A stretch of DNA of 64,000 nucleotides from Leucoraja erinacea (Eukaryota). The notes beneath the pieces are model-generated. The model did no database searches and was not told the origin of the DNA. It saw nothing but the letters and a program-made list of their open reading frames with translations. Position numbers and translations under genes: made by a program. Shown here one piece after another: positions 1-39,189 of the stretch (position 1 is the stretch's first letter; every line of letters begins with the position of its first letter). The DNA is taken from the NCBI RefSeq assembly GCF_028641065.1, contig NC_073377.1, positions 161,138,001-161,202,000 on the forward strand. The letters run 5' to 3'.

Positions 1-846
1 TTGACTAAGAATTAAATAGTGGGAAATTGAGATTGTATCATTGTCAAAAAGGTGAATATGTTTGCCATTGGAGAGCTTGGTGACATAATATGCGCATTAC
101 ATTTCAGAAAGTATGGTAGATATGCCTGGAATCAATAGCAACCTATGGGGTTTCAATCTAATATTCTTCCCATAATTGTGATATTTCTATTTTCCAGCCT
201 GCTTTGACATTTAACCATACAATATTTCCAGAGTCCAGTAATTTCAGGATAACTAATTTAATTTATTACAGTATACTTTAAATTATATAAACACTTAATA
301 GTATGTCAAATATCCTCATACTGTGTGATCCATTAATCTGTGTAGTCATTGGGAAGAAGGTTACACAAAAAGAAAGACAGGAGGTGTTGCATGTTGCTAA
401 CATCACATTTTTGGTATTTAAAAATTAAAATATGAAAACAAAATTTTTCAAAGGTAACTTAGATGCTGAAGTGGAATTCTGAAATTAACAAAAACATTGA
501 GCAGATTAGTTAACATTTGATAACATTTTAACTCCTGAATTGTTCAATCCTTGCCTTTATTTATTACAGTAATACTGATTTGTTGTGGCTAATCTTGCTT
601 TTCCAAAGCAAATTAAACACAGATATATTCATTTGCATAATTATTGCTAGCTGTGGTTACATAATGGGATTCCTACACAACACCATAGCTACTCAATGGA
701 CATATTTAAACAATGGACTTGGTTGTTCTTTCCTTTAAAACACTGCATCTTACATTGTGGATCTGTTGTAGGTTGAGAGACAATCCAGAAACAAACATTT
801 TTATTTGGAAATTCTGACATGTTTTAAACATATATTTTCCTTCCAG

Positions 847-964
847 ATTGTCCAGTGATAGCGTTAATGCCGACCTACATTCACTTGACAGTAGAACAAA
901 ATCGATGCAAATACATCTAAAGCAAGACGTTGACCTATTTCATCAAATGGAGGATTTCATTCAG
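847..964 (+). CDS. FHDC1: FHDC1/INF1 formin, internal coding exon (C-terminal part of FH2 domain)
   Basis: Acceptor tttccttccag (AG 845-846) and donor CAG|gtgagc. Encodes (R)LSSDSVNADLHSLDSRTKSMQIHLKQDVDLFHQMEDFIQ, matching the FHDC1 FH2 segment ending QMEDF(L/I)Q. Confidence 0.9.
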
Positions 965-3851: not shown

Positions 3852-4126
3852 TTTGCTTCTAAAATCTTAATAACTATAATTTAGAAGAACAAGAAAGCTA
3901 GATTTTTTCAAAAACATCATCATTTAGATTACCTGATTTTAGGACATTATTGCAATGTAACCTGTATGATGTTTGCAGATAATGATTTGTGAGAGATTCA
4001 CTGTATCTTAATTGGTACACATGGCAATAAAATACCTTTGAACTTTTTGAACGATGGAGAATGAAGGCACAATGTTATTTCTGTTCATTGCGTGTTTGCT
4101 GATGTACTGTATATCTTACCCTGCAG

Positions 4127-4291
4127 CAAGGTTTGGGAGAAGTGGACAGATTAGAGGCACAACGGATGGAATTGCAGAGGGAAGCCAATACCCTCATTGA
4201 TTTCTTCTGTGAAGACAAAGAAACAATGAAATTAGAAGAATGCTTCAAAATTTTCCAAGACTTTTGTGATAGATTCAAAAAAGCTGTCAAG
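4127..4291 (+). CDS. FHDC1: FHDC1 penultimate coding exon (end of FH2 domain)
   Basis: Acceptor ccctgcag and donor AAG|gtaagt, 165 nt, phase 0/0. Encodes QGLGEVDRLEAQRMELQREANTLIDFFCEDKETMKLEECFKIFQDFCDRFKKAVK; LIDFFCEDK..MKL.ECF.IF.DFC is characteristic of FHDC1. Confidence 0.95.
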
Positions 4292-4297
4292 GTAAGT

Positions 4298-4414
4298 CGG
4301 CCCGAAACGTTGCCTATTTCCTTCGCTCCATAGATGCTGCTGCACCCGCTGAGTTTCTCCAGCTTTTTTGTGTACCTTCGATTTTCCAGCATCTGCAGTT
4401 CCTTCTTAAACACA
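4298..4414 (+). mobile_element. Penelope-like terminal-repeat fragment directly after the FHDC1 splice donor
   Basis: cggcccgaaacgttgcctatttccttcgctccatagatgctgctgcacccgctgag...; related pieces at ~23470-23560, 34800-34950, 36555-36630, 36940-37030 and 55270-55390. Confidence 0.6.
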
Positions 4415-4614
4415 ACTACACTGATCTGCCTGTGAACCATTTTGTCGGCTTTTGGAATGAGGGATTTCTGATTGCCTCACTGTCACCAAATATATACAGT
4501 AGATGGCGCTGTTTACTGAATAACTAAAGGAAAGCTCTCATAACTCTGAAACCTAAAATCTGAAGCAAATCTTAAAATAAGATAACAACCAAATGTATTG
4601 TAAGTGCAGCTGAG

Positions 4615-5096
4615 TAGACAATAGACAAATAGGTGCAGGAGTAGACCATTCGGCCCTTCGAGCCAGCACCGCCATTCAATGTGATCATGGCTGATCATCC
4701 CCAATCCGTACCCCATTCCTGCCTTCTCCCCATATCCCCTGACTCCGCTATTTTCAAGAGCCCTATCTAGCTCTCTCTTGAAAGCATCCAGAGAACCTGC
4801 CTCCACCGCCCTCTGAGGCAGAGAATTTCACAGACTATCCACTCTCTGTGAGAAAAAAGTGTTTCCTCGTCTCCATTCTAAATTGCTTACTCCTTATTCT
4901 TAAACTGTGGCCCTGGACTCCCCCAACATCGGGAATATGTTTCCTGCCTCTAGCGTGTCAAAGGCCTTACCAATCTTATATGTTTCAATGAGATTTCCTC
5001 TCATTCTTCTAAACTCCAGAGTGCACAAGCCCAGCTGCTCCATTCTCTCAGCATATGACAGTCCCGCCATCCCAAGAATTAACCTTGTAAACCTAT
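4615..5096 (-). mobile_element. CR1 (HER1-like) LINE 3' fragment
   Basis: C-terminal EAGSLDAFKRELDRAL...GYGEKAG plus CR1 3' UTR and short tandem tail. Confidence 0.9.
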
Positions 5097-5108
5097 GAAT
5101 AAGAATGA

Positions 5109-5378
5109 TGAATGAATAAGTTTATTGGCCAAGTATTCCCATACAAGGAATTTGCCTTGGTGCTCTGCCCGCAAGTGACAACATGACATACAGTGACAGT
5201 TAGGAATGGCACATAAAACATTAAACATTAATAATAAAACACTATTGATTAAACATGTGAATTAAATAAAATACCAGAGCAAAAGGAGGCTACAGATTTT
5301 TGGTTATTGAGTACAGCTACTACTCGTGGGGAAAAAAAGCAGTTTTTATGCCTGGCTGTGGCAGCTTTGACAGTACGG
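5109..5378 (-). mobile_element. LINE (Rex1/Babar-like) 3' UTR fragment
   Basis: (attc)n tail and gccaataaac end on the minus strand; the same end recurs at ~12810-12850. Confidence 0.5.
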
Positions 5379-6175
5379 TATCAGACAACCAAAAAATCAG
5401 CCTTCATTTGAAAAACATTTGAGGTTGATGTTGCAATTGATGCATGCCCCGGATCGGACCGACTATGAAACATCGACTGGACATCGCTCTGCGTTGACTG
5501 AGGTTTCTCAAGCTGGGCAGTTCCAGTGTTTTACTGGCTTTGCTGCAGGTGAGAGAAAGGAGCCATCGTCTCCAGTCCTGATGCTAATCAGTGACTCAAA
5601 CTAATATTTTATGTAGACAGACATTCTTCAAGGACAAAATCTAGATCAGTTATGATTACAGATCATGAATCAAAACAAACATCCTGTCTGATTTAATGCA
5701 CAACTTAAAATAACATTTTGGTCAATGAACATTAGAGGGAATAGCTATAAGGTGGGAGGGTAATGTTTAGCCTGTTCACTGCCAAGATTTTCTTCACTAT
5801 TGGCCATGAGCCTTGTATATCCACCACATATATCAGTGTGTCCATAATGAAGATATGTGGGGCAAGGTTTTACACAGAGAGTGGTGGAAGACCTGGAACA
5901 CAAGGCCAAGGGTGGTGGTGGAGGCAGCAGAGATGATAGTGGTGTTTGAGGCTTTTGGATAGACACTTAGAAGTGCAGGAAATAAAGGAATATGGATCAT
6001 GTACTGGCAGATGTGATCAGTTTAACTTGGCATCATGTTTGGCTCAAACATTGTGGCCTGAAGGGTTCCTTCCTGGGCTGTTCTGTTCTGTTCTATGAAT
6101 TATTATCTATAGAATGGAGAAGGGCCCACTGAATCACACTTGTAAATTCCATCCTGCCCAAAGACCATAAGATTA

Positions 6176-6790
6176 ATCAGAGCATTGAGTATAGAAGCTG
6201 GGATGTAATGTTAAAATTGTACAAGGCATTGGTGAGACCAAATCTGTAGTATGGTGTACAATTTTGGTTGCCTAATTATAGGAAGGATGTCACCAAAATA
6301 GAGAGAGTACAGAGGAGATTTACTAGAATGTTGCCTGGGTTTCAACAACTAAGTTACAGAGATGGGTTGAATAAGTTAGGTCTTTATTCTCTGGAGCGCA
6401 GATGGTTAAGGGGGGACTTGATAGAGGTCTTTAAAATGATGAGAGGGATAGACAGATTTGATGTGGACAAGCTTTTCCCTTTGAGAATAGGGAATATTCA
6501 AACAAGAGGACATGACTTCAGAATTAAGGGACAGAAGTTTAAGGGTAACATGAGGGGGAACTTCTTTACTCAGAGAGTGGTAGCGGTGTGGAATGAGCTT
6601 CCAGTGGAAGTGGTGGAGGCAGGTCCGTTGGTATCATTTAAAAATAAATTGGATAGGCATATGGATGAGAAGAGAATGGAGGGTTATGGTATGAGTGCAG
6701 GCAGGTGGGACTAAGGGAAAAAAAGTTGTTCGGCACGGACTTGTAGGGCCGAGATGGCCTGTTTCCGTGGTGTAATTGTTATATGGTTAT
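6176..6790 (+). mobile_element. CR1 LINE 3' fragment
   Basis: ERVQRRFTRMLPG..RGDLIEVFK..TRGH..FFTQRVV..WN.LP; same subfamily as 32175-32628 and 53995-54592. Confidence 0.92.
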
Positions 6791-7052
6791 AATAGGCTCT
6801 TTTGAGAGTTAATACAGGAAATATCAATGTTTTCTCCAGAAGAGGGGAGATGTTTGAACCAAACAAATTATTCTAAGAAGAAAATAACTGAATTGTATTT
6901 GTGGTTTTCAGACATTTTTGCCACAAGGGATTCTCCAAAATATCATTCATAATCTAGGATTAGAAAGATTTATTTTAAGTTGTGCATCAAATTGGACAGG
7001 AGTTTTGTTTTGAATTTCTATGTCAACATAATTCAAGAAGTATCATTCAATG

Positions 7053-7520
7053 TTCAAGTCAAGTCAAGAGAGTTCATTCCCAGACGGGACAATGAAATCA
7101 TCAGCACTACAGCACAACAGAATATAGTAGGCACAAATACAGAACATATTAGATTAGATTAGATTAGATTAGATTCCTTTATTGTCATTCACACCTTTCG
7201 GTATGAACGGACATTTCGATGCCTGCAGTCATACATAATAATAATAAACAACAAAACATACAATAAACACAAATTAACATCCACCACAGTGAGTCCACCA
7301 CATGTCATATCAGTGTGTCTATATACCATTATATAAATATATACACACATCAATAAATAAGCAGTTACAATGCAAATAAACAGATAATGGTCTCTTAATG
7401 TTCAGAGATTTGTTTCAGTTAAGTTTAATAGCCTGATGGCTGTGGGGAAGTAGCTATTTCTGAACCTGGACGTTGCAGTCTTCAGGCTCCTGTACCTTCT
7501 ACCTGAAGGTAGCGGGGAGT
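7053..7520 (-). mobile_element. Rex1/Babar-like 3' fragment with nested 3' end of a second retroelement (7147-7300, (AGATT)n tail)
   Basis: (caagt)n tail; 7420-7518 is the reverse complement of an LPSGRRYRSL..T.SRFRNSYFPTAIRLLN-type coding end. Confidence 0.6.
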
Positions 7521-7612
7521 TAATGTGGGGATTTTGCGTTTATTTATTTAAGGGAAATTGGCATTAAAATAAAATAATGAATTAATGAAAAACAAATCTC
7601 TGTACCCCATAG

Positions 7613-10025
7613 GAAAACAGAGACAGAGAAATTAAGGAACTCTGTCAACAACAAAGGCAAAAGGAATTGGATGAGAAACGGCATTCGTGGGCTGCTGGTG
7701 AACGGAGTATCTTTGGAAGGAGTAGTAGCGAAAATGATGTGAAACTGCTCATCAAGGATGGACTACATGACCTAATAGCTTTCACTCATCCGAGATCTCA
7801 AAGCCCCGGGAGTGTGAAGAGAACTAGAAGCAGACGTTTGCGCTCATCGGAAGGTGCTGCTATTGACAGCCATTTATTGTCATTTTTGCAGGCTGCACAT
7901 ACAGAAGAACAAGCTAAGTCAAACAGTATCCCTCGTTCTGTTGCACGTAGCTCTAGACAGAGGGTAGCCTGGCAAAAGATGTCAGAAACCCACGATGGAA
8001 GCTTAGATAGTGCCCACTTTGACTCCAATCAGGGCTGTGCTCATACCACAGTTATAAAAGACAGCTATCTCTGCTTGGCTTCAGCTGAGCCATGCACTGC
8101 TAGGAATACAGAGACCGCTCCTACAGAGAACTTCACAAAGACTGAAAGTGCAGTTGGTCAGCATGAACAAGATGCCTACAATAACAATGAGAATATAATA
8201 AAGGATAATGCCCACACAAAGTATACAGACCTCACAAACCTTAACCAGATGATCGCCTCCGAACAGCAGCTTGAGCTTCTTGAAGGTTTACAGATTTTCA
8301 ATTGCACCAGTGCCACTGACTCTAGCCAAGTGACGACCTGTGATGATGTTACACTAACCGACCTGGAGTACAGCGAAGACCTGAGTTTGCATACTCCTAC
8401 TACAGATGTGAGTTTGTCGACACCGAGTACTGATGTGAGTGTGCAGACTCCCAGTACAGATGTGGGCATGCAAACTCTCAGTATAGATGTGGGTGTGCAG
8501 ACTCCCAGTACAGATGTGAGTGTGCAGACACCTAGTACAGATGTGAGTGTACAAACTCCTAGTACAGAGGAGAATCTGCAGACTACTGATACAGATGTCA
8601 GTGTGCAGGCCTGTGACACAGATATGAGTCCCCTGATGCCTAGCACCAGTGTAGGCATTCAGACATCCTCTAGCTCTGATTCTGGTGCATTTTCTGGCCT
8701 GGTCTCGAAGATATTTGATGGTGAGTCTTACTGCTTTACGGATTCTCGGTCATTACCACAGAAAATAAAGAATACAGAAGGCACTGAAGTATCCATCCAG
8801 AGTTCAGATGCAGCGAATAACTCTGTTTTAAACAAGGGAAAGCAGAACGGTGTTTTTTGTTTTGGGATATACAGGAGGTGGAGATTGTTCTGAACCTTCA
8901 GAGCAATGTGAAGTCAAAGCTGCCTGCCAGAAAATCCAAGTAGAATCACAACACCAATTTAGAAGCCCTAAAGGAGATCACACTGAAGTTTCTAATGATT
9001 TGTCGGACAATTCTCTCATTCCCATTACCAAAAATATAACCATTAATAATGGCCGTGCTCTTGAGGCAGCCTCGGAGACAATGAACTTACCAAAGGTAGC
9101 AAAGCAGATTTGCAGTTTAAAGCAGCCTAGTATGGTTAGAGGGGAAGCATTGCCCACTCCAAAATCAACTTTGCATTGTTTGAGCAGTCCAGTTCCTCCT
9201 AAAACCTCAAGGACAACAAACCACCCTAATAACGAGGAAATGAGGAGGGTTTTGCCAATATCAAAGTCAAGTAGAAGATCCAACAGTGTCAGAAGACCAG
9301 AAGCAAAAGCATTAAGTAATGATGAACAAAAACACTCTCATAAGGCTTCAGGGTCAAAGTGGCGAGACGGTTTGTCAAAGACTCCTCGCAGGTCCAGCTA
9401 TCCAGTGGCAGAACAAAAGCCAACAAAAGAGACTGCTGCTTTGGCAAACGCATCTAATAGCATTGCAAAGCGTAAAGACTCCCTCAGAAAACCTGCCGCT
9501 AAGCCAGTCCGAAATCTCCCCAAGCCAAAGCCCGATGAAAGCAGTAAGATTTGTCGCTCAGTTACAAGAAGCTTCCCCAGGCACAGCACAAATACAGGCG
9601 GAACAACAGAGTCCACGGGAGGAAATAGCAATTCAGCCTCACCAATGCTTACTCCCAACTTTGCCAGAAACACTGTGGCCTCTTCCTCTCGACGCCAGAG
9701 GACAGATCCCAGACCGATTCCCAGCACGTCTCCGCAGCCCGCCAAAGCAACAAACCTCACCAGAACCTCTTCGCAGAGGCAGTCTACGCCCAAGCACGTT
9801 GGGACAAACCATACAAAGAGCAGTGAAAATACCAGCATGAAACGGCCAAGTACCCAAAAACTGGGGAGCAAGACCGAAGAGGAGGAGAAGGCACCAACAT
9901 GCAAAACACAGTCCACCTACACAGGCGACAACACTTCGCAAACATCAACCGAAAAGAAACACCTTCCAGCCACAGATTCCATTAGAAGCAAGAAAACGCC
10001 AGAAAGATCATCGAAGTGGAAGTAA
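7613..10025 (+). CDS. FHDC1: FHDC1 terminal coding exon(s): disordered tail and C-terminal microtubule-binding region; reading frame shifts near 8850-8890
   Basis: Acceptor ccccatag|GAA, in frame with ORF 7667. The first frame gives ENRDRE...RHSWAAGE..FGRSSSENDV. The second frame (8850-10025) gives LRKPAAKPVRNLPK, FARNTVASSSR and LTRTSSQRQ, all FHDC1 C-terminal motifs. Stop TAA at 10023-10025. Confidence 0.88.
8393..8662 (+). repeat. In-frame 27-nt (9-aa) tandem repeat, 10 units, consensus TPSTDVSVQ
   Basis: Units start at 8393, 8420, 8447, 8474, 8501, 8528, 8555, 8582, 8609 and 8636 (ACTCCCAGTACAGATGTGAGTGTGCAG-like). Confidence 0.95.
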
Positions 10026-12724: not shown

Positions 12725-15160
12725 TCTACCGCTACACCACCGTGCATGATAGGGGTTGATGGAACAATGATAGGTGTTGAATTTTGCAGCCTCGATGGCA
12801 AAGATAGATGAACGAATGAATAAGTTTATTGGCCAAGTTTTCACATACAAGATGCTTTGTAAAATCACACTAATTGAAATGTGATTGAAGTTTTGCATCA
12901 TAACATCCCAAAGAGAGATCTGTGATATGTGTTACGGCGGCAGGCGCGGGCACACCGCGACGCCCTGTGTCTCCCTTTCAAGGGAGATGCTAAAAATGCA
13001 TTTCGATGTCTCTGTACTGTACACTGACAATGACAATAAATTGAATCATTTCATTTCATTTCATTTCATTTCATTTCTGTGATAGCAATCTTCTAACTTT
13101 GAAGAGTTAGTATTTATTCTTTTCCCACTGTGTCCACGTATTCATTAGTGGATTGCAGTGGGAGTTGGAAAGGTGGAGAACTGAGCACATGGATGTCAGT
13201 GGGTGTTTAGAAATGGACGCATGCATAAGCAGCAACATAGGATATAACCCCTTGAATGTGATCTACATTGATAAGAACGTCTGATCTTGGCTGTCCATTC
13301 CCTGAACCGGTTGTCCCCCAGGTTGCGGCAGGGTCCTGTGCCTCAAACTGTCTGTAAACAACAGTTCACAATTTGGAAATGTGCCTGTGAACGGAGTTCC
13401 CACACAGCTGAAGTTGCCTGTACCCCGCAGCGGCTGGCAAACCCAAACCTACAATCGGTCATCCAATTGTTTATTTGTATGCATGGGCTGTACATAAGTC
13501 ACCCGTTCATAAACTGTAACTCTTGATGTCCAAGTGATCTATCCGAACCTTGAGTATATTCAATGACTCAATCACCTCAGCTGCCTTGGGTAAATGTTTT
13601 TTTAAATATTTGAAAGCTACAAGAAGGATACTAAAACATGCCGGCTCTAGTGTACTGTCTAACTGGGGTCTATCTTACACTGTTACACTTAGTATGAGAT
13701 TGTTGCCTAATGTATAGTGGAATCATCACTGAATTGTATCCAAAAACATAATTTCACTGTACTTCAGTACACAGGACAATAAAGTATTATTGAACTATTA
13801 AATAATTCCAAATGCTCCGTGAGTGGAAGGAAAATACACTCATCTCCAGACTAAAAGATAGACTCCATAATCTAGAGCAATTCCCCCTCGTTCCTGGGTC
13901 GCCAACATGTAAACGCTCTCAGTATTCACACTGTCAAGCCCAGACTCTTACACATTTCAGTATGTTCATCTCCCATTCTAAACACCAATGAGCGTATGTT
14001 CAATCTGCTCAACTTCTCCTCCAAAGGCAACCCCAAGTAAACTTTCTCTCAACTTCTTTTAATATAAATATATTGGTATCTGGGATAAGGTGATCTGTTG
14101 CCTTGGAGAATAGCAGTCAGTGTGACAGGGACAAGGGATAAAGGGGGAAGGTATGACACTTATGATTTAAAAAAAACCCCGAAATGGGACTGGTCAGGTT
14201 GTGCAACACCTGATTTATGGAAATCTGCCTTTATGAAAAATTATCTCATTCATTTTTTAAGATTTTTTTCAAGATAGTAATATATTTCATGGTATCATTA
14301 ATAACCCGGATGCGGTATATGTTTCATCAGATACATTATGGGAAATGTTAAGGAGAACCTAGAAAATATTCAATGAAGCAAAAGAATTATAGGAAGTCTA
14401 TGTTAAGGGCAGTGACAAAAAAAATTATATTAAAAAAAAAATCAGTAAATGCAGTTCCTCATCAAATGGAACCTTACGTAACCCAGCGTCAACCTGTTAT
14501 CTGCTATCCCACTTCAGAAATCAAGATGAGTTAGTATCCATTTCACTGGTAGCTACTTTCTGAGCTCCCTTTTATACATCAGAGCACTGGTTACCATGCT
14601 CTCTTTCACACACAGGGGCATGGTGCATGCACTCCCTTTCACACAGTGGGACTTCAGTTGCAACGCTCCAATTACACTGACGGTGCCCAGTTTCAACACC
14701 CCCATTAAACTCAGCATTTATTCCTGCATTCGTTTGAACCTCACCCAGCTTGGTTTTTAGCACTCCTTTGAAACTTGGTCAGGCCTGGTTTCCCGTGTCA
14801 TTTGAACTTACCTTATTAACTGGAAAATGTATTCTTCTACTGTGTAATGTCTCAAGAAAGTGTCGGAGAATTAATAAAAAGAAATCCAATTGGCCAGAAA
14901 ATCTACTAGTTCACCCCCGAGACTGAGCATTCTGGATTAACAGAAATTTACTGTAGGTGTGGGTTAAACAACGCATTGGAGAATCACTGGGTTTCCACGG
15001 TACAGCAATGTGAGTGATTTAGTACACATTGCTCTGATGTATAGTGTTAGTTGGCATTTTAACATTACAATTTGCTGACACTTCCCTCCTGAACTGCACA
15101 TGATAAAAGTTGATAGCATTGTGATTAATTCATTAGCAAGGATTGAGTACTAGCTAACAA

Positions 15161-15630
15161 ATTCCTGGGATGTCAGGACTGGCTTATGAAGAAAGACTGG
15201 ATAGACTTGGTTTATACTCTCTAGAATTTAGGAGATTGAGAGGGGATCTTATAGAAACTTACAAAATTCTTAAGGGGTTGGACAGGCTAGATGCAGGAAG
15301 ATTGCCCCCGATGTTGGGGAAGTCCAGTACAAGGGGTCACAGCTTAAGGATAAGGGGGAAATCCTTTAAAACTGAGATGAGAATAACTTTTTTCACACAG
15401 AGAGTGGTGAATCTCTGGAACTCTCTGCCACAGAGGGTAGCCGAGGCCAGTTCATTGGCTATATTTAAGAGGGAGTTAGATGTGGCCCTTGTGGCTCAGG
15501 GGATCAGAGGGTATGGAGAGAAGGCAGGTACGGGATACTGAGTTGGATGATCAGCCATGATCATATTGAATGTAGGTGCAGGTTCGAAGGGCCGAATGGC
15601 CTACTCCTGCACCTAATTTCTATGTTTCTA
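15161..15630 (+). mobile_element. Young CR1 LINE 3' fragment
   Basis: MSGLAYEERLDRLGLYSLEFRRLRGDLIETYK...; tail tttctatgtttcta. Confidence 0.92.
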
Positions 15631-18728: not shown

Positions 18729-18840
18729 ACAAATCACCTTTGCCACTCATGTGGCTCCGAGGTGTTTGAGTTATCGGCCCCACTGGAGAAGCCGGGATTT
18801 TCCAGGGCGGTGAGACGGAGAGCCAACGTCCCAGAACAAG

Positions 18841-19341
18841 AGGGAGTGCAGAGAAGGTTCACCAGACTGATTCCTGGGATGTCAGGACTGTCTTATGAAG
18901 AAAGACTGGATAGACTTGGTTCATACTCTCTAGAATTTAGGAGATTGAGAGGGGATCTTATAGAAACTTACAAAATTCTTAAGGGGTTGGACAGGCTAGA
19001 TGCAGGAAGATTGTTCCCGATGTTGGGGAAGTCCAGGACCAGGGGTCACAGCTTAAGGATAAGGGGGAAATCCTTTAAAACCGAGATGAGGAGAACTTTT
19101 TTCACACAGAGAGTGGTGAATCTCTGGAACTCTCTGCCACAGAGGGTAGTTGAGGCCAGTTCATTGTCTATATTTAAGAGGGAGTTAGATGTGGCCCTTG
19201 CGGCCAAGGGGATCAGAGGGTATGGAGAGAAGGCAGGTACGGGATACTGAGTTGGATGATCAGCCATGATCATATTGAATGGCGGTGCAGGCTCGAAGGG
19301 CCGAATGGCCTACTCCTGCATCTAATTTCTATGTTTCTATG
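18841..19341 (+). mobile_element. Young CR1 LINE 3' fragment
   Basis: EGVQRRFTRLIPGMSGLSYEERL...GYGEKAGTGY plus 3' UTR. Confidence 0.92.
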
Positions 19342-19659: not shown

Positions 19660-20930
19660 GCGAGATCAGTCAAAGTCAGCATGGATTTATGAAAGGGAAA
19701 TCATGCGTGACTAATTTGGGAATTTTTTGAGGATGTAACAAGTAGAATGGATAAGGGAGAGCCAGTGGCTGTGGTAGATCTGGACTTTCAAAAAGTCTTT
19801 GGCATGGTCCCACACAAGAGATTAGTGTGCAAAATTAGAGCACATGGTATTGGGAGTAGGTTATTGACATGGATAGAGAACTTGTTGGCCGACAGGAAGC
19901 AAATTGTAAGAATTGACTTGTCCTTCCCAGAATGGCAGGCAGTGACTAGTGGGGTCACTGCTGGAACACCAGTTGTATACAATATAGATTAACGATTTAG
20001 ACGAGGAAATTAAATGTAACATCTCTAGGTTTGCAGATGACACAAAGCTGGGGGGCAGTGTGAGCTGCGAGGAGGATGCTATGAGGCTGCAGGGTGACTT
20101 AGATAGGTTGGGTGAGTGGGTAGAAGCATAGCAGATGCAGTATAATGTGGATAAATGTGAGGTTATCCACTTTGGTGACAAGAACAGGAAGGCAGATTAT
20201 TATCTGAATGGTGCCAGATTAGGAAAAGTGGAGATGCAATGAGACATGGGTGTGCTGGCAGTGATGAAATTGGCCGAAAGCTAATGACATGTTGGCCTTC
20301 ATTGCAAGAGGATTTGAGTTTAGGAGCAAAGAGGTCCTACTACAGTTGTGCAGGGCCTTGGTGAGACCGCACCTGCAGTATTGTGTGCAATTCTGGTCTT
20401 CTAATATGTAGAAGGATATTATTGCTATTGAGGGAGTGCAGCGTAGATTCACCAGGTTAATTCCCGGGATGGCGGGATTATCATATAATGAAAGAAAGGG
20501 TCGATTGGGCATGCATTCACTGGAATTTAGAAGGATGAGAGGGGATCTTATAGAAACATACCAAAATCTTAGAGGATTGGACAGGGTAGTTGCAGGAAAA
20601 ATGTTCCCAATGTTGGGGGTGTCCAGAACCAGGGGTCACATTTTAAGAATAAGGGGCAGGCCATTTAGGACTGAGATGAGGAAAAACCTTTTCACCCAGA
20701 GAGTTGTGAATCTGTGGAATTCTCTGCCGCAGAAGGCAGTGGAGGCCATTTCACTGGATGTTTTCAAGAAAGTTAGACTTAGCTCTTAGGGCTAAGGGAA
20801 TCAAGGGATATGGTGAAAAAGCCAGAACGAGGTACTGATTTTGGATGATCAGCCATGATCATATTGAATGGTGGTGTTGGCTCGAAGGGCCGAATGGCCT
20901 GCTCCTGCACCTATTTTCTATGTTTCAATG
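19660..20930 (+). mobile_element. Decayed CR1 LINE (RT domain to 3' end)
   Basis: QHGFMKGKSC, LDFQK.F..VPH, RFADDTKLGG and C-terminal motifs, with stops and frameshifts. Confidence 0.9.
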
Positions 20931-37536: not shown

Positions 37537-38471
37537 TAACTCAGATCAACAAATCTTGCACAGTTGTTGAAGGATTTGGAAAAGATTAGGGATAGTTTTA
37601 AGTTACAGTAGACAAGGCCTTTATTCAAAAGGTTAGTTTTGAATAGACTTAAAGTTTTCAGTCTTTTGTTGATGAGTTATTTAGTGCCTCGATAACTCAG
37701 AACTTACGCTATTTCTCGTAGGGAAGTTAACTCCCCACACATGTGTCTTCTGCTTTGTAGTTTTATGCTGCTCCTCCCTATATTGTTTAAATATTGTAAG
37801 ATGTCACCCTATGTCCTTTCATTCAAGATACATTTATTTGTCACGTACTAATTGGTACAGTGAAATGTGTGAAATAAGTTCATTCTGACTTATGGCAGGT
37901 GTGAAGGTTTTACAAATAACTGGATGTCTAAATGTAATCTAGAGTAAGATTTCCAGTGGTTACAAACAGGAAATAACCGTTCTTTAAACCTAAACATCTG
38001 TCATTTTGCATATCCTGATAGAATTAATTGCTGACTAATATAATGAAGACATTCCATGTGAGAATCTTGCTACAAAACTTTTAAGCAGATTTTTTTATCA
38101 TTTTTCTTGCCGCAAAAGCAATACAATTAGTTTCCAAATTTAAGGAAAATGGCAGAAATATTTGAATAAATGCTTGAGTCTGTGAAGGAGCAAAGTGTGC
38201 CAAAGTATTTCAAAAGATCACAGTCAGATTACAACGATGATAAGATAAACTTTAGGAAGGGTCATAGAAAAGTTAGCTGAACAGGTTAACCTTAAGGAAA
38301 AATTAAAAGGAGGCGAGATGGAGGAAGTTATAGAGACAAATTTAGAATGAATGGCGGAGAAAATTGGCAAAGATAACAATTGCTGTGAAATACAATGAGG
38401 AAACATAGAAAAGTATAACGTTGGAACAGGCCCGCAATGTCCATGACAAACCGGATGCCAAATTAAACCAA

Positions 38472-39098
38472 ATTTGAGTATAGGAGCAGGGAGGTTCTAC
38501 TGCAGTTGTACAGGGTCTTGGTGAGACCACACCTGGAGTATTGCGTACAGTTTTGGTCTCCAAATCTGAGGAAGGACATTATTGCCATAGAGGGAGTGCA
38601 GAGAAGGTTCACCAGACTGATTCCTGGGATGTCAGGACTGTCTTATGAAGAAAGACTGGATAGACTTGGTTTATACTCTCTAGAATTTAGAAGATTGAGA
38701 GGGGATCTTATAGAAACTTACAAAATTCTTAAGCGGTTGGACAGGCTAGATGCAGGAAGATTGCTCCCGATGTTTGGGAAGTCCAGGACAAGGGGTCACA
38801 GCTTAAGGATAGGGGGGAAATCCTTTAAAACCGAGATTAGAAGAACTTTTTTCACACAGAGAGTGGTGAATCTCTGGAACTCTCTGCCACAGAGGGTAGT
38901 TGAGGCCAGTTCATTGGCTATATTTAAGAGGGAGTTAGATGTGGCCCTTGTGGCTAAAGGGATCAGAGGGTATGGAGAGAAGTCAGGTACGGGATATTGG
39001 ATGATCAGCCATGATCATATTGAATGGCGGTGCAGGCTCGAAGGGCCAAATGGCCTACTCCTGCACCTAATTTCGATGTTTCTATGTTTCTATGTTTC
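38472..39098 (+). mobile_element. Young CR1 LINE 3' fragment
   Basis: YRVLVRPHLEYCVQFWSP...; open frame through to the 3' UTR. Confidence 0.93.
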
Positions 39099-39189
39099 TA
39101 AACCAATCCCGTCTGCCTGTACATGATCTATATCCCCCCACTTCCTGTATATCCATGTGCCTATCCAAAAGCCACTTTAATTTCTCTTA

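What the first reader, a model, noticed from the sequence alone, without database searches (positions are those of the whole stretch)
8393..8665. Multivalent LC8 (DYNLL)-binding array built from a coding minisatellite in FHDC1
Seen: a 9-aa repeat gives DVSVQT, DVGMQT, DVGVQT, DVSVQT, DVSVQT, EENLQT, DVSVQA and SVGIQT in a low-complexity tail. Units differ at many third codon positions yet keep D-V-[SG]-[VMI]-Q-T. Established: LC8 binds disordered motifs of the type D(-4)-x-x-[TVIM]-Q-T. Tandem arrays occur in ASCIZ/ATMIN, Nup159 and Chica/FAM83D. Phosphorylation of the Thr in Bim's TQTP motif blocks binding. Inference: this FHDC1 may have gained about six LC8 sites that zip the two tails of the FH2 dimer into a rigid ladder between the actin-nucleating and microtubule-binding ends, possibly switchable at the QT-P sites. 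I do not recall such an array in mammalian FHDC1, so this could be an undescribed lineage-specific formin-LC8 module.
Basis: partly seen in the sequence, partly recalled or inferred. Interest (0 to 1): 0.8.

Follow-up and report, generated by a model that had tools for sequence, protein, structure and literature searches.

The report
Skate formin repeat resembling LC8 sites
A skate's FHDC1 formin gene carries a real, transcribed 9-amino-acid repeat, shared by sharks and absent from bony vertebrates, whose units look like docking sites for the dimerising hub protein LC8; that binding is plausible but untested.

Summary
Window 8375-8671 (+) is an in-frame 27-bp minisatellite of 11 units inside the large terminal exon (7613-10025) of FHDC1 of a rajid skate. 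It is 96% identical to Amblyraja radiata XP_032873321.1. RNA contigs splice the last FH2 exon (4127-4291) onto 7613, and RNA reads cover the repeat with no skipping.

The array is not private to this species. Amblyraja has 12 units. Six sharks have 3-15 units with the consensus T-D-V-S-L-Q-T-P-D. None of 173 bony-vertebrate FHDC1 proteins has an array; some of them carry a single ancestral [DE]DLSL unit at that place.

The skate unit T-D-V-S-V-Q-T-P meets all eight published positional rules for LC8 motifs. It shares VSVQT with the validated binder SON, and the region is predicted disordered.

Three things weaken the LC8 reading:
- Sharks have Leu at -1, seen in none of 79 validated binders.
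- The near-identical peptide SDVSSQTP is a measured non-binder.
- The 9-residue pitch leaves a 1-residue linker, against a documented minimum of 3, so neighbouring units probably cannot be occupied together.

LC8 binding is therefore the leading hypothesis (about 0.4), not a result. The neighbouring note of a "154-nt intron" is contradicted: the window has a 1-nt frameshift there.

The parts
8375..8671 (+). In-frame 27-bp coding minisatellite of 11 units of 9 aa. Units 2-6 (8429-8563) are the homogeneous core reading [TI]-D-V-[SG]-[VM]-Q-T-[PL]-S. The flanking units are degenerate.
   Evidence: TRF; unit table; pairwise unit distances
7613..10025 (+). Terminal coding exon of FHDC1, running from the end of FH2 through the disordered tail and C-terminal region to the stop. 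It is read in two frames in this window because of a 1-nt frameshift near 8836-8838.
   Evidence: tblastn with P0001, P0078 and P0076; the RNA contigs align from 7611 because the last two bases of the donor exon (AG) equal the acceptor AG at 7611-7612, so the exon starts at 7613
4127..4291 (+). Last FH2-domain exon (…LIDFFCEDKETMKLEECFKIFQDFCDRFKKAVK). It has a GTAAGT donor and is spliced to 7613.
   Evidence: The loose end of RNA contigs at 7611 matches window 4266-4289 exactly; tblastn
845..964 (+). Preceding FH2 exon (…SVNADLHSLDSRTKSMQIHLKQDVDLFHQMEDFIQ). Its start coordinate is approximate.
   Evidence: Translation; tblastn match of P0001 residues 121-165
8836..8838 (+). GGG run carrying one extra G compared with transcripts and orthologues. 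It causes the apparent frameshift in the terminal exon, downstream of the repeat.
   Evidence: P0078 and P0001 read …AANNSVLNKESRTVFFVLGYTGGGDCSEP straight through; frame switch in tblastn; the loose end of an X2 contig reads AAGGAAAGCAG
8153..8374 (+). Conserved segment just upstream of the array: a weakly predicted helix (…IASEQQLELLEGLQIF…) followed by the acidic stretch CDDVTLTDLEYS that leads into unit 0.
   Evidence: AF2 helix at exon residues 181-225, pLDDT 53-65; 60-71% identity to sharks

Best explanation
The feature is an in-frame 27-bp minisatellite in the terminal exon of FHDC1. It arose no later than the common ancestor of sharks and skates, by tandem amplification of a single acidic-hydrophobic element ([DE]-D-L-S-L) that some FHDC1 proteins of bony vertebrates (birds, frogs, axolotl, coelacanth) carry about 250 residues after the FH2 domain. 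The result is a disordered array of 3-15 units, 11 of them here, with the consensus T-D-V-S-[V/L]-Q-T-P-[S/D].

Each unit is an amphipathic strand-forming peptide. V(-3), V/L(-1) and T(+1) would face the hydrophobic groove of the LC8/DYNLL dimer, with Q(0) and D(-4) on the other side and P(+2) as the strand breaker.

The most likely function is multivalent, avidity-driven recruitment of LC8 dimers. These would cross-brace the two tails of the FH2 dimer between the actin-binding and microtubule-binding ends. Because the pitch is only 9 residues, LC8 would load at most about every second unit, in more than one register, so expect 2-4 dimers on the skate array rather than 6-8. The Q-T-P threonine could act as a proline-directed phospho-switch.

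Shown: the array, its frame, its transcription, its phylogenetic spread, the conservation of its consensus, and its fit to the LC8 rules. Inferred: LC8 binding, stoichiometry, cross-bracing and phospho-regulation. The confidence given (0.4) is for the LC8 function; the structural and evolutionary description alone is about 0.9.
For: - Real coding array in FHDC1.
- Transcribed and retained. RNA contigs show the 4291-to-7613 splice, raw oligo-dT RNA reads cover 8370-8690 with no joints, and four Logan-assembled skate contigs (3.4-4.7 kb) encode the array.
- Present in Amblyraja (12 units) and six sharks (3-15 units) with the same consensus in 7 of 9 positions. That 78% matches the conserved boxes of the tail (0.71-0.80) and exceeds its loosest parts (0.34-0.47).
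- Synonymous excess among the core units.
- Absent from 173 bony-vertebrate FHDC1 proteins.
- The skate unit meets every positional rule of Jespersen et al. 2019: Q at 0, a mid-sized residue at -1 and +1, P at +2, no aromatic at -2, a residue of at least Val size at -3, and D at -4.
- Val at -1 occurs in 6 of 79 validated binders and 0 of 32 non-binders. SON RCVSVQTD, MAST1 RHQSVQTE, ZFPM1 SDKGVQTP and KIBRA LDVSSQTD are close relatives of the unit (hand count).
- In the DYNLL2 crystal structure the +1, -1 and -3 side chains point into the hydrophobic groove.
- Weak, non-canonical motifs bind LC8 cooperatively when arrayed, as in KANK1.
- The region is predicted disordered: pLDDT about 30-35 and no secondary structure.
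Against: - No binding data exist, and LC8Pred and AlphaFold-Multimer could not be run here.
- ANKIB1 SDVSSQTP, two residues away from the skate unit, is an ITC non-binder, and only 7 of 19 PSSM-predicted peptides bound in that study.
- In sharks 50 of 56 units have Leu at -1. No validated binder has Leu or Met there, and the one LQT peptide tested (PLK1) did not bind.
- The pitch leaves a 1-residue linker. The shortest documented is 3 residues, and neighbouring LC8 dimers already touch at that spacing.
- The best-conserved positions are D(-4), S(-2), L(-1) and Q(0), whereas T(+1) is only 77-83% conserved. For an LC8 anchor, +1 should be among the most constrained.
- The D-[LV]-S-L core predates the QT.
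- Copy number ranges from 3 to 15, and single units have lost Q in every species, so no particular valency is required.
- A mammalian FHDC1 BioID screen named Cep170, EB1, Snap29 and Arl2 among its putative interactors and did not name DYNLL. No paper links FHDC1 to DYNLL.
- An unrelated abalone protein carries a similar 9-aa PDVVVQTSS array, so such repeats do arise elsewhere.
Confidence: 0.4

Rival explanations
1. Tolerated low-complexity expansion. A coding minisatellite sits in a disordered linker where length and sequence matter little. It is kept recognisable by unequal crossing-over and gene conversion, and the LC8 likeness is coincidental.
For: - Copy number varies from 3 to 15 between species and by one unit between two skates.
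- Units at the edges are degenerate while the centre is homogeneous, as expected for a turning-over array.
- Each lineage has its own fixed variant (V against L at -1, S against D at +3), as concerted evolution gives.
- Between the two skates the array changes about as fast as the rest of the tail.
- A similar DV-x-VQT 9-mer array exists in an unrelated abalone protein.
Against: - The unit consensus is 7/9 identical between sharks and skates, two of the deepest branches of living elasmobranchs, while nearby tail segments have fallen to 34-47% identity.
- The array is present in all eight species sampled.
- The core units show a synonymous excess.
- Stegostoma and Chiloscyllium share unit-by-unit orthology, including the degenerate SIIT and SLKT units, so turnover is slow and homogenisation alone cannot explain the conserved consensus.
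Confidence: 0.25
2. Multivalent copy of an older FHDC1 motif for a partner other than LC8. The functional core is D-[LV]-S-L, conserved as a single element in some bony-vertebrate FHDC1 proteins, and elasmobranchs multiplied it to raise avidity. On this view Q-T-P is secondary.
For: - Birds, frogs, axolotl and coelacanth have one [DE]DLSL[HYRQC]S unit at the homologous place, after the conserved TDLE stretch.
- In sharks the best-conserved positions are D 98%, S 93%, Q 91%, L 89% and V 82%, ahead of T(+1) at 77%.
Against: - No known linear-motif class fits D-[LV]-S-L-Q. CtBP PxDLS, SUMO-interaction, LIR, clathrin-box, PP2A-B56 LxxIxE and calcineurin LxVP patterns were compared by eye and none matches (own knowledge of the patterns).
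- Q is 91% conserved in the array but is not conserved in the bony-vertebrate single unit, so the array acquired a new constraint.
Confidence: 0.2
3. Multi-site phosphorylation module. Each unit has a proline-directed T-P site and hydroxyl residues every third position (T-x-x-S-x-x-T). This suits priming followed by CK1-type sequential phosphorylation, which would tune the charge of the FH2-to-microtubule-binding linker. It is compatible with, and could gate, LC8 binding.
For: Read directly from the unit sequences: TDV-SLQ-TPD and TDV-SVQ-TPS give T, S, T at positions 1, 4 and 7 of nearly every unit, and T-P in 65-75% of units. Phosphorylation of the equivalent Thr in Bim's DKSTQTP releases LC8 (established knowledge, not tested here).
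Against: This is pure pattern inference with no phospho-proteomic data. It does not explain the strong conservation of D, V, L and Q.
Confidence: 0.1
4. Assembly or annotation artefact: the repeat is mis-assembled or lies in an intron.
For: The window does carry one probable base-level error about 170 nt downstream of the array.
Against: The same array is found in independent RNA contigs and raw RNA reads, in four Logan-assembled skate proteins and in seven other annotated species.
Confidence: 0.01

Closest known systems
Multivalent LC8 (DYNLL) duplex scaffolds: ASCIZ/ATMIN, Nup159, Chica/FAM83D, KANK1 L2
   Same: Several TQT-type motifs are clustered in a disordered segment of a protein that is itself dimeric or becomes so, and individually weak motifs could gain from avidity. 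The KANK1 case also links actin-associated structures to microtubules.
   Different: Those arrays are made of non-identical motifs with linkers of 3 to 40 residues. This one is a true minisatellite with a fixed 9-residue pitch and a 1-residue linker. Its anchor is VQT or LQT rather than TQT. No binding has been measured, and no formin is among the validated clients of Table S4 (FMN2 EAKSIQTS is listed there as a non-binder).
Single validated LC8 motifs with a VQT or DVS context: SON RCVSVQTD, MAST1 RHQSVQTE, ZFPM1 SDKGVQTP, KIBRA/WWC1 LDVSSQTD
   Same: They share VSVQT (SON), D-V-S-x-Q-T (KIBRA) and VQTP (ZFPM1) with the skate unit TDVSVQTP.
   Different: Three of the four have Arg or Lys at -5 or -3, which the algorithm weights positively; KIBRA does not. 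The skate unit has Thr at -5 and Val at -3. ANKIB1 SDVSSQTP, the closest peptide overall, did not bind.
FHDC1 (INF1) of mammals
   Same: Orthologous gene with the same layout: FH2, then a long disordered tail with conserved boxes, then a conserved C-terminal region ending in W-K.
   Different: Mammalian and other bony-vertebrate FHDC1 proteins have no tandem array and at most one stray D..[TVILM]Q[TVI] match.

Membership tests
FHDC1 orthologue | FH2 domain immediately upstream in the same transcript | tested here: met
   Exons at about 845-964 and at 4127-4291 match FH2 residues 121-223 of P0001, which carries PF02181. RNA contigs join 4291 to 7613.
FHDC1 orthologue | Best matches are FHDC1 proteins along the whole tail, including the C-terminal region | tested here: met
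   E=8e-216 and 96% identity to XP_032873321.1. The next hits are FHDC1 of coelacanth, frog, lizard, sturgeon and others. P0078 is 99.5% identical over 8835-10022.
LC8/DYNLL-binding linear motif (TQT type) | Gln at position 0, with a mid-sized H-bonding or hydrophobic residue at -1 and +1 | tested here: met
   Skate core units have VQT or MQT, and the last unit has IQT. VQT and IQT occur in validated binders; Met at -1 has no precedent. Shark units have LQT, and Leu at -1 has no validated precedent either.
LC8/DYNLL-binding linear motif (TQT type) | Flank rules: -4 polar (Asp favoured), -3 at least Val-sized, -2 not aromatic, +2 Pro/Asp/Glu and not hydrophobic, no internal Pro | tested here: met
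   The unit has D at -4, V at -3, S or G at -2 and P at +2. One unit has L at +2 (TDVGMQTL), which is disfavoured.
LC8/DYNLL-binding linear motif (TQT type) | Motif lies in an intrinsically disordered, accessible region | tested here: met
   AF2 gives pLDDT of about 30-35 and no secondary structure over exon residues 226-359. This was a single-sequence model, so the evidence is weak.
LC8/DYNLL-binding linear motif (TQT type) | Score above the LC8Pred thresholds (amino-acid score 12.9, volume/polarity score 0.1) | not testable with these tools
For orientation only: SDVSSQTP scores 15.6/2.1 and RCVSVQTD 18.9/7.5 in the published human scan.
LC8/DYNLL-binding linear motif (TQT type) | Direct, QT-dependent binding to LC8 | not testable with these tools
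   This needs ITC, SEC-MALS or native MS, or at least AlphaFold-Multimer with LC8.
Multivalent LC8 duplex scaffold | Two or more motifs spaced so that LC8 dimers can sit side by side (documented linkers are 3 residues or longer) | tested here: not met
   The pitch is 9 residues, which is an 8-residue motif plus a 1-residue linker. The shortest documented linkers are 3 residues in dASCIZ QT2-3 and 3-4 in KANK1. The condition is met only if alternate units are used (18-residue pitch, 10-residue linker).
Coding minisatellite | Head-to-tail DNA repeat with a period that is a multiple of 3, in frame, inside an exon | tested here: met
   Period 27, no indels, open frame throughout, and covered by RNA.

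The most novel reading that the evidence does not exclude
Elasmobranch FHDC1 is the first formin whose linker between the actin-nucleating FH2 dimer and the microtubule-binding end is turned into an LC8-braced duplex. It would do so with a genetically length-tunable minisatellite of 3-15 units at the tightest motif pitch known (9 residues). That pitch would force alternate-site or sliding occupancy, and the QTP threonines could gate loading by phosphorylation.
Probability: 0.3. Interest if true: 0.65.

Novelty: new member of a known kind. Interest (0 to 1): 0.5.

Why it matters
If LC8 binds, this would add a formin to the list of multivalent LC8 clients. It would also provide a natural series for study: the same unit in 3 to 15 copies, with Val or Leu at -1, at a 9-residue pitch. 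That series bears on how linker length and motif strength set stoichiometry and rigidity in LC8 duplexes, a question the field currently studies with engineered ASCIZ and KANK1 constructs. It would further suggest how a disordered formin tail can be stiffened between its actin and microtubule ends. If LC8 does not bind, the array remains a clean example of an ancient coding minisatellite whose peptide consensus is conserved between sharks and skates, built by amplifying an older FHDC1 motif of unknown function.

Tried and rejected
The step was left out and replaced by hand counts.
No shark or Amblyraja DNA could be fetched, so between-species codon analysis of the units was impossible and only protein-level comparison was done.
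3. No chimaera FHDC1 and no batoid other than skates turned up in two word searches. The origin of the array is therefore bounded only at the shark-skate ancestor.
4. The reading of 8721-8874 as a 154-nt intron was rejected: there are no spliced reads, the depth is the same as in the flanking exon, and orthologues and same-species proteins read through it.
5. Pfam finds nothing in the tail, as expected for a disordered region.
6. A literature search for FHDC1 together with DYNLL1 gave only gene-list co-mentions.
7. Other linear-motif classes (CtBP PxDLS, SIM, LIR, clathrin box, B56 LxxIxE, calcineurin LxVP, TRAF, polo-box, FHA) were compared by eye and do not fit the unit.
8. An ancestral LC8 site elsewhere in FHDC1 was looked for and not found. 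The skate 'CQKIQVES' is not conserved in sharks, and stray motifs occur in only 17 of 173 bony-vertebrate proteins.
9. Rfam finds nothing in the highly expressed repeat fragment at 7423-7519.
Full report
**1. What is there.** Tandem Repeats Finder reports a single strong array at 8382-8608: period 27, 8.4 copies, 78% matches, no indels, score 237. In the frame of the long open stretch 7613-8890 the array reads as 11 nine-residue units at 8375-8671: EDLSLHTPT, TDVSLSTPS, TDVSVQTPS, TDVGMQTLS, IDVGVQTPS, TDVSVQTPS, TDVSVQTPS, TEENLQTTD, TDVSVQACD, TDMSPLMPS, TSVGIQTSS. The centre (units 2-6) is homogeneous, with 3-7 nucleotide differences per pair. The edges are degenerate, with 8-18 differences.

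**2. Which gene, and is it expressed.**
- The exon protein (window 7613-8719) hits FHDC1 isoform X2 of the thorny skate Amblyraja radiata (XP_032873321.1) at E=8e-216 and 96% identity. FHDC1 of coelacanth, frog, lizards, sturgeon, lungfish and teleosts follow.
- tblastn places FH2 residues of that protein on window 830-964 and 4121-4300, and the tail on 7613-10022.
- Contigs from two probable RNA runs align from 7611 and carry, before that point, letters that match window 4266-4289 exactly. The last FH2 exon (4127-4291, GTAAGT donor) is therefore spliced to 7613.
- Raw oligo-dT RNA reads cover the repeat bins (8370-8690) at about the same low depth as the rest of the exon, and no joint of any kind was found. 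Four Logan-assembled skate proteins carry the array. The refutation test 'transcripts that splice out the repeat' is therefore not met.
- The source is a rajid skate. One Logan-assembled protein (P0078) is identical to the window across the array.

**3. How widespread is it.**
- A word search with the Amblyraja protein found the orthologues of six sharks. All have the array at the homologous place, directly after the conserved …CD[DE]VTLTDLEY[AS] stretch: Heterodontus 15 units, Stegostoma 11, Scyliorhinus 11, Cetorhinus 8, Chiloscyllium 8 and the sawshark Pristiophorus 3. Amblyraja has 12, one more than the window.
- The shark consensus is T-D-V-S-L-Q-T-P-D and the skate consensus is T-D-V-S-V-Q-T-P-S, identical at 7 of 9 positions. 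That 78% equals the conserved boxes of the tail (0.71-0.80 identity between skate and sharks) and exceeds its loosest segments (0.34-0.47).
- Per-position conservation over 56 shark units is D(-4) 98%, S(-2) 93%, Q(0) 91%, L(-1) 89%, V(-3) 82%, T(+1) 77%, P(+2) 75%, T(-5) 66% and +3 57%.
- Stegostoma and Chiloscyllium share unit-by-unit orthology, including units that have lost Q (SIIT, SLKT). Turnover is therefore slow.
- Birds, frogs, axolotl and coelacanth have a single [DE]DLSL[HYRQC]S element at that place. The array is thus an amplification of an older FHDC1 element. It happened no later than the shark-skate ancestor.
- Chimaeras and rays could not be sampled.

**4. Selection.** In core units 2-6 there are 9 synonymous and 5 non-synonymous differences from the consensus, and 9 of the 14 lie at third codon positions. 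With 6.3 synonymous sites out of 27, the naive binomial p is 0.0013 and the dN/dS-like ratio is 0.17. Counting distinct events rather than cells gives about 6 to 4, and allowing for transition bias the excess is only suggestive. The motif codons and the linker codons do not differ in this respect (8:11 against 6:9). The stronger argument for constraint is the deep conservation of the consensus described in section 3.

**5. Fit to LC8.**
- Jespersen et al. 2019 (PMC6607443) give these positional rules: Gln at 0; a mid-sized H-bonding or hydrophobic residue at -1 and +1; Pro, Asp or Glu and no hydrophobic residue at +2; no bulky aromatic at -2; a side chain at least as large as Val at -3; a polar residue, typically Asp, and nothing hydrophobic larger than Ala at -4. 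T-D-V-S-V-Q-T-P meets all of them.
- In their Table S4 (my hand count), Val at -1 occurs in 6 of 79 validated binders and 0 of 32 non-binders. Asp at -4 occurs in 31 of 79 against 7 of 32. Val at -3 occurs in 7 of 79 against 2 of 32. Pro at +2 occurs in 12 of 79 against 5 of 32.
- The close relatives SON RCVSVQTD, MAST1 RHQSVQTE, ZFPM1 SDKGVQTP and KIBRA LDVSSQTD are all binders.
- In the DYNLL2 crystal structure the side chains at +1, -1 and -3 point into the hydrophobic groove (PMC3078936). The unit puts T, V/L and V there, and D, S and Q on the other face.
- AF2 on the single sequence gives pLDDT of about 30-35 and no secondary structure over the array.

**6. What speaks against LC8, or limits it.**
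- (a) ANKIB1 SDVSSQTP, which differs from the skate unit only at -5 and -1, is an ITC non-binder although LC8Pred scores it 15.6/2.1. Only 7 of 19 matrix-predicted peptides bound in that study.
- (b) Leu or Met at -1 occurs in none of the 79 binders. The only LQT peptide tested (PLK1) did not bind, although LC8Pred does pass some human LQT 8-mers such as NCKAP5 RDIGLQTP. Sharks have Leu at -1 in 50 of 56 units.
- (c) The 9-residue pitch leaves one residue between 8-residue motifs. The shortest documented linkers are 3 residues (dASCIZ QT2-3) and 3-4 residues (KANK1). At 3 residues neighbouring LC8 dimers are already in lateral contact and produce off-register species, while linkers of 6-9 residues give homogeneous complexes (PMC10046861; the KANK1 preprint). 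Adjacent units are therefore unlikely to be occupied together. Alternate units (10-residue linker) would fit well, giving perhaps 2-4 dimers on the skate array and several possible registers.
- (d) T(+1) is less conserved than D(-4) and S(-2), which is not the order expected for a TQT anchor. The D-[LV]-S-L core also predates the QT.
- (e) No literature links FHDC1 to DYNLL. A mammalian BioID screen named Cep170, EB1, Snap29 and Arl2 among its putative interactors. Mammalian FHDC1 lacks the array, so this says little about elasmobranchs.
- (f) An unrelated abalone protein has a PDVVVQTSS 9-mer array.

In favour of tolerance, KANK1 shows that arrays of weak and even Q-less motifs can bind LC8 cooperatively.

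**7. Verdict on mechanism.** The structural and evolutionary description (a conserved, transcribed, elasmobranch-wide coding minisatellite in the FH2-to-MTBD linker of FHDC1) is secure. That the array is under peptide-level constraint is likely, about 0.75. That the constrained function is LC8 recruitment is the best single hypothesis, about 0.4, ahead of three rivals:
- a tolerated neutral expansion (0.25);
- multiplication of the older D[LV]SL motif for an unknown partner (0.2);
- a multi-site phosphorylation module (0.1), which is not exclusive of LC8. The unit has hydroxyl residues every third position and a T-P site.

The placement between the actin and microtubule ends rests on the mammalian domain map: N-terminal FH1-FH2, with boxes 4-5 forming the C-terminal MTBD (PMC4713130 and PMC6080654).

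**9. Side result.** The neighbouring note s1-876362 reads 8721-8874 as a cryptic 154-nt intron that repairs a frameshift. The evidence points the other way:
- RNA reads cover that stretch at exon-like depth with no joint.
- Amblyraja and three of the four Logan-assembled skate proteins read straight through it as …AANN[SC]VLNKESRTVFFVLGYTGGGDCSEP; the fourth (P0076) also reads through but lacks the four residues SVLN.
- tblastn shows a frame switch within 8835-8866.
- An RNA contig reads AAGGAAAGCAG where the window has AAGGGAAAGCAG.

The window therefore has one extra G at 8836-8838, either an assembly error or a rare allele. There is no intron there. The repeat lies upstream of this site and is unaffected.

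Noticed in passing
window 8836-8838 (context 8721-8874): The apparent frameshift in the FHDC1 terminal exon comes from one extra G in a GGG run. Transcripts and orthologues read through in frame, and no spliced reads support the proposed 154-nt intron.
   Followed up: partly
window 8822-8833: There is a 12-nt in-frame indel polymorphism or species difference (loss of SVLN). It is seen in the Logan-assembled protein P0076 (…AANNKESRTV…) and in the loose end of an X2 RNA contig at 8821.
   Followed up: partly
window 7423-7519: An intronic fragment of about 100 nt has RNA depth 20-200 times that of the neighbouring exon, with sharp loose ends on both sides. It is an interspersed repeat expressed from many other copies. 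It has no Rfam match.
   Followed up: partly
window 6250-6711, 15158-15538, 18729-19247, 20412-20786, 38467-39123 and others, both strands: Many open stretches share a conserved peptide block (…IERVQRRFTRMLPG…LGLYSLERRRLRGDLIE…) and look like retroelement ORF remnants. This is typical repeat-rich vertebrate intergenic DNA. Pfam gave no hit for the 6250-6711 piece.
   Followed up: no
window 8153-8374 (exon residues 181-254): A predicted helix (…IASEQQLELLEGLQIF…) and the acidic stretch CDDVTLTDLEYS directly precede the array. They are conserved from sharks to coelacanth and frogs, and their function is unknown.
   Followed up: partly
P0011 (XP_048247127.1, Haliotis rufescens), residues about 270-370: An unrelated abalone protein carries a 9-residue tandem repeat PDV[VA]VQTSS with the same D-V-x-V-Q-T core and pitch. 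It may be a convergent low-complexity repeat.
   Followed up: no
window 8918-8941 (…AACQKIQVES…): An nNOS-like IQV match lies downstream of the array in skates. It is not conserved in sharks, so it is probably chance.
   Followed up: partly
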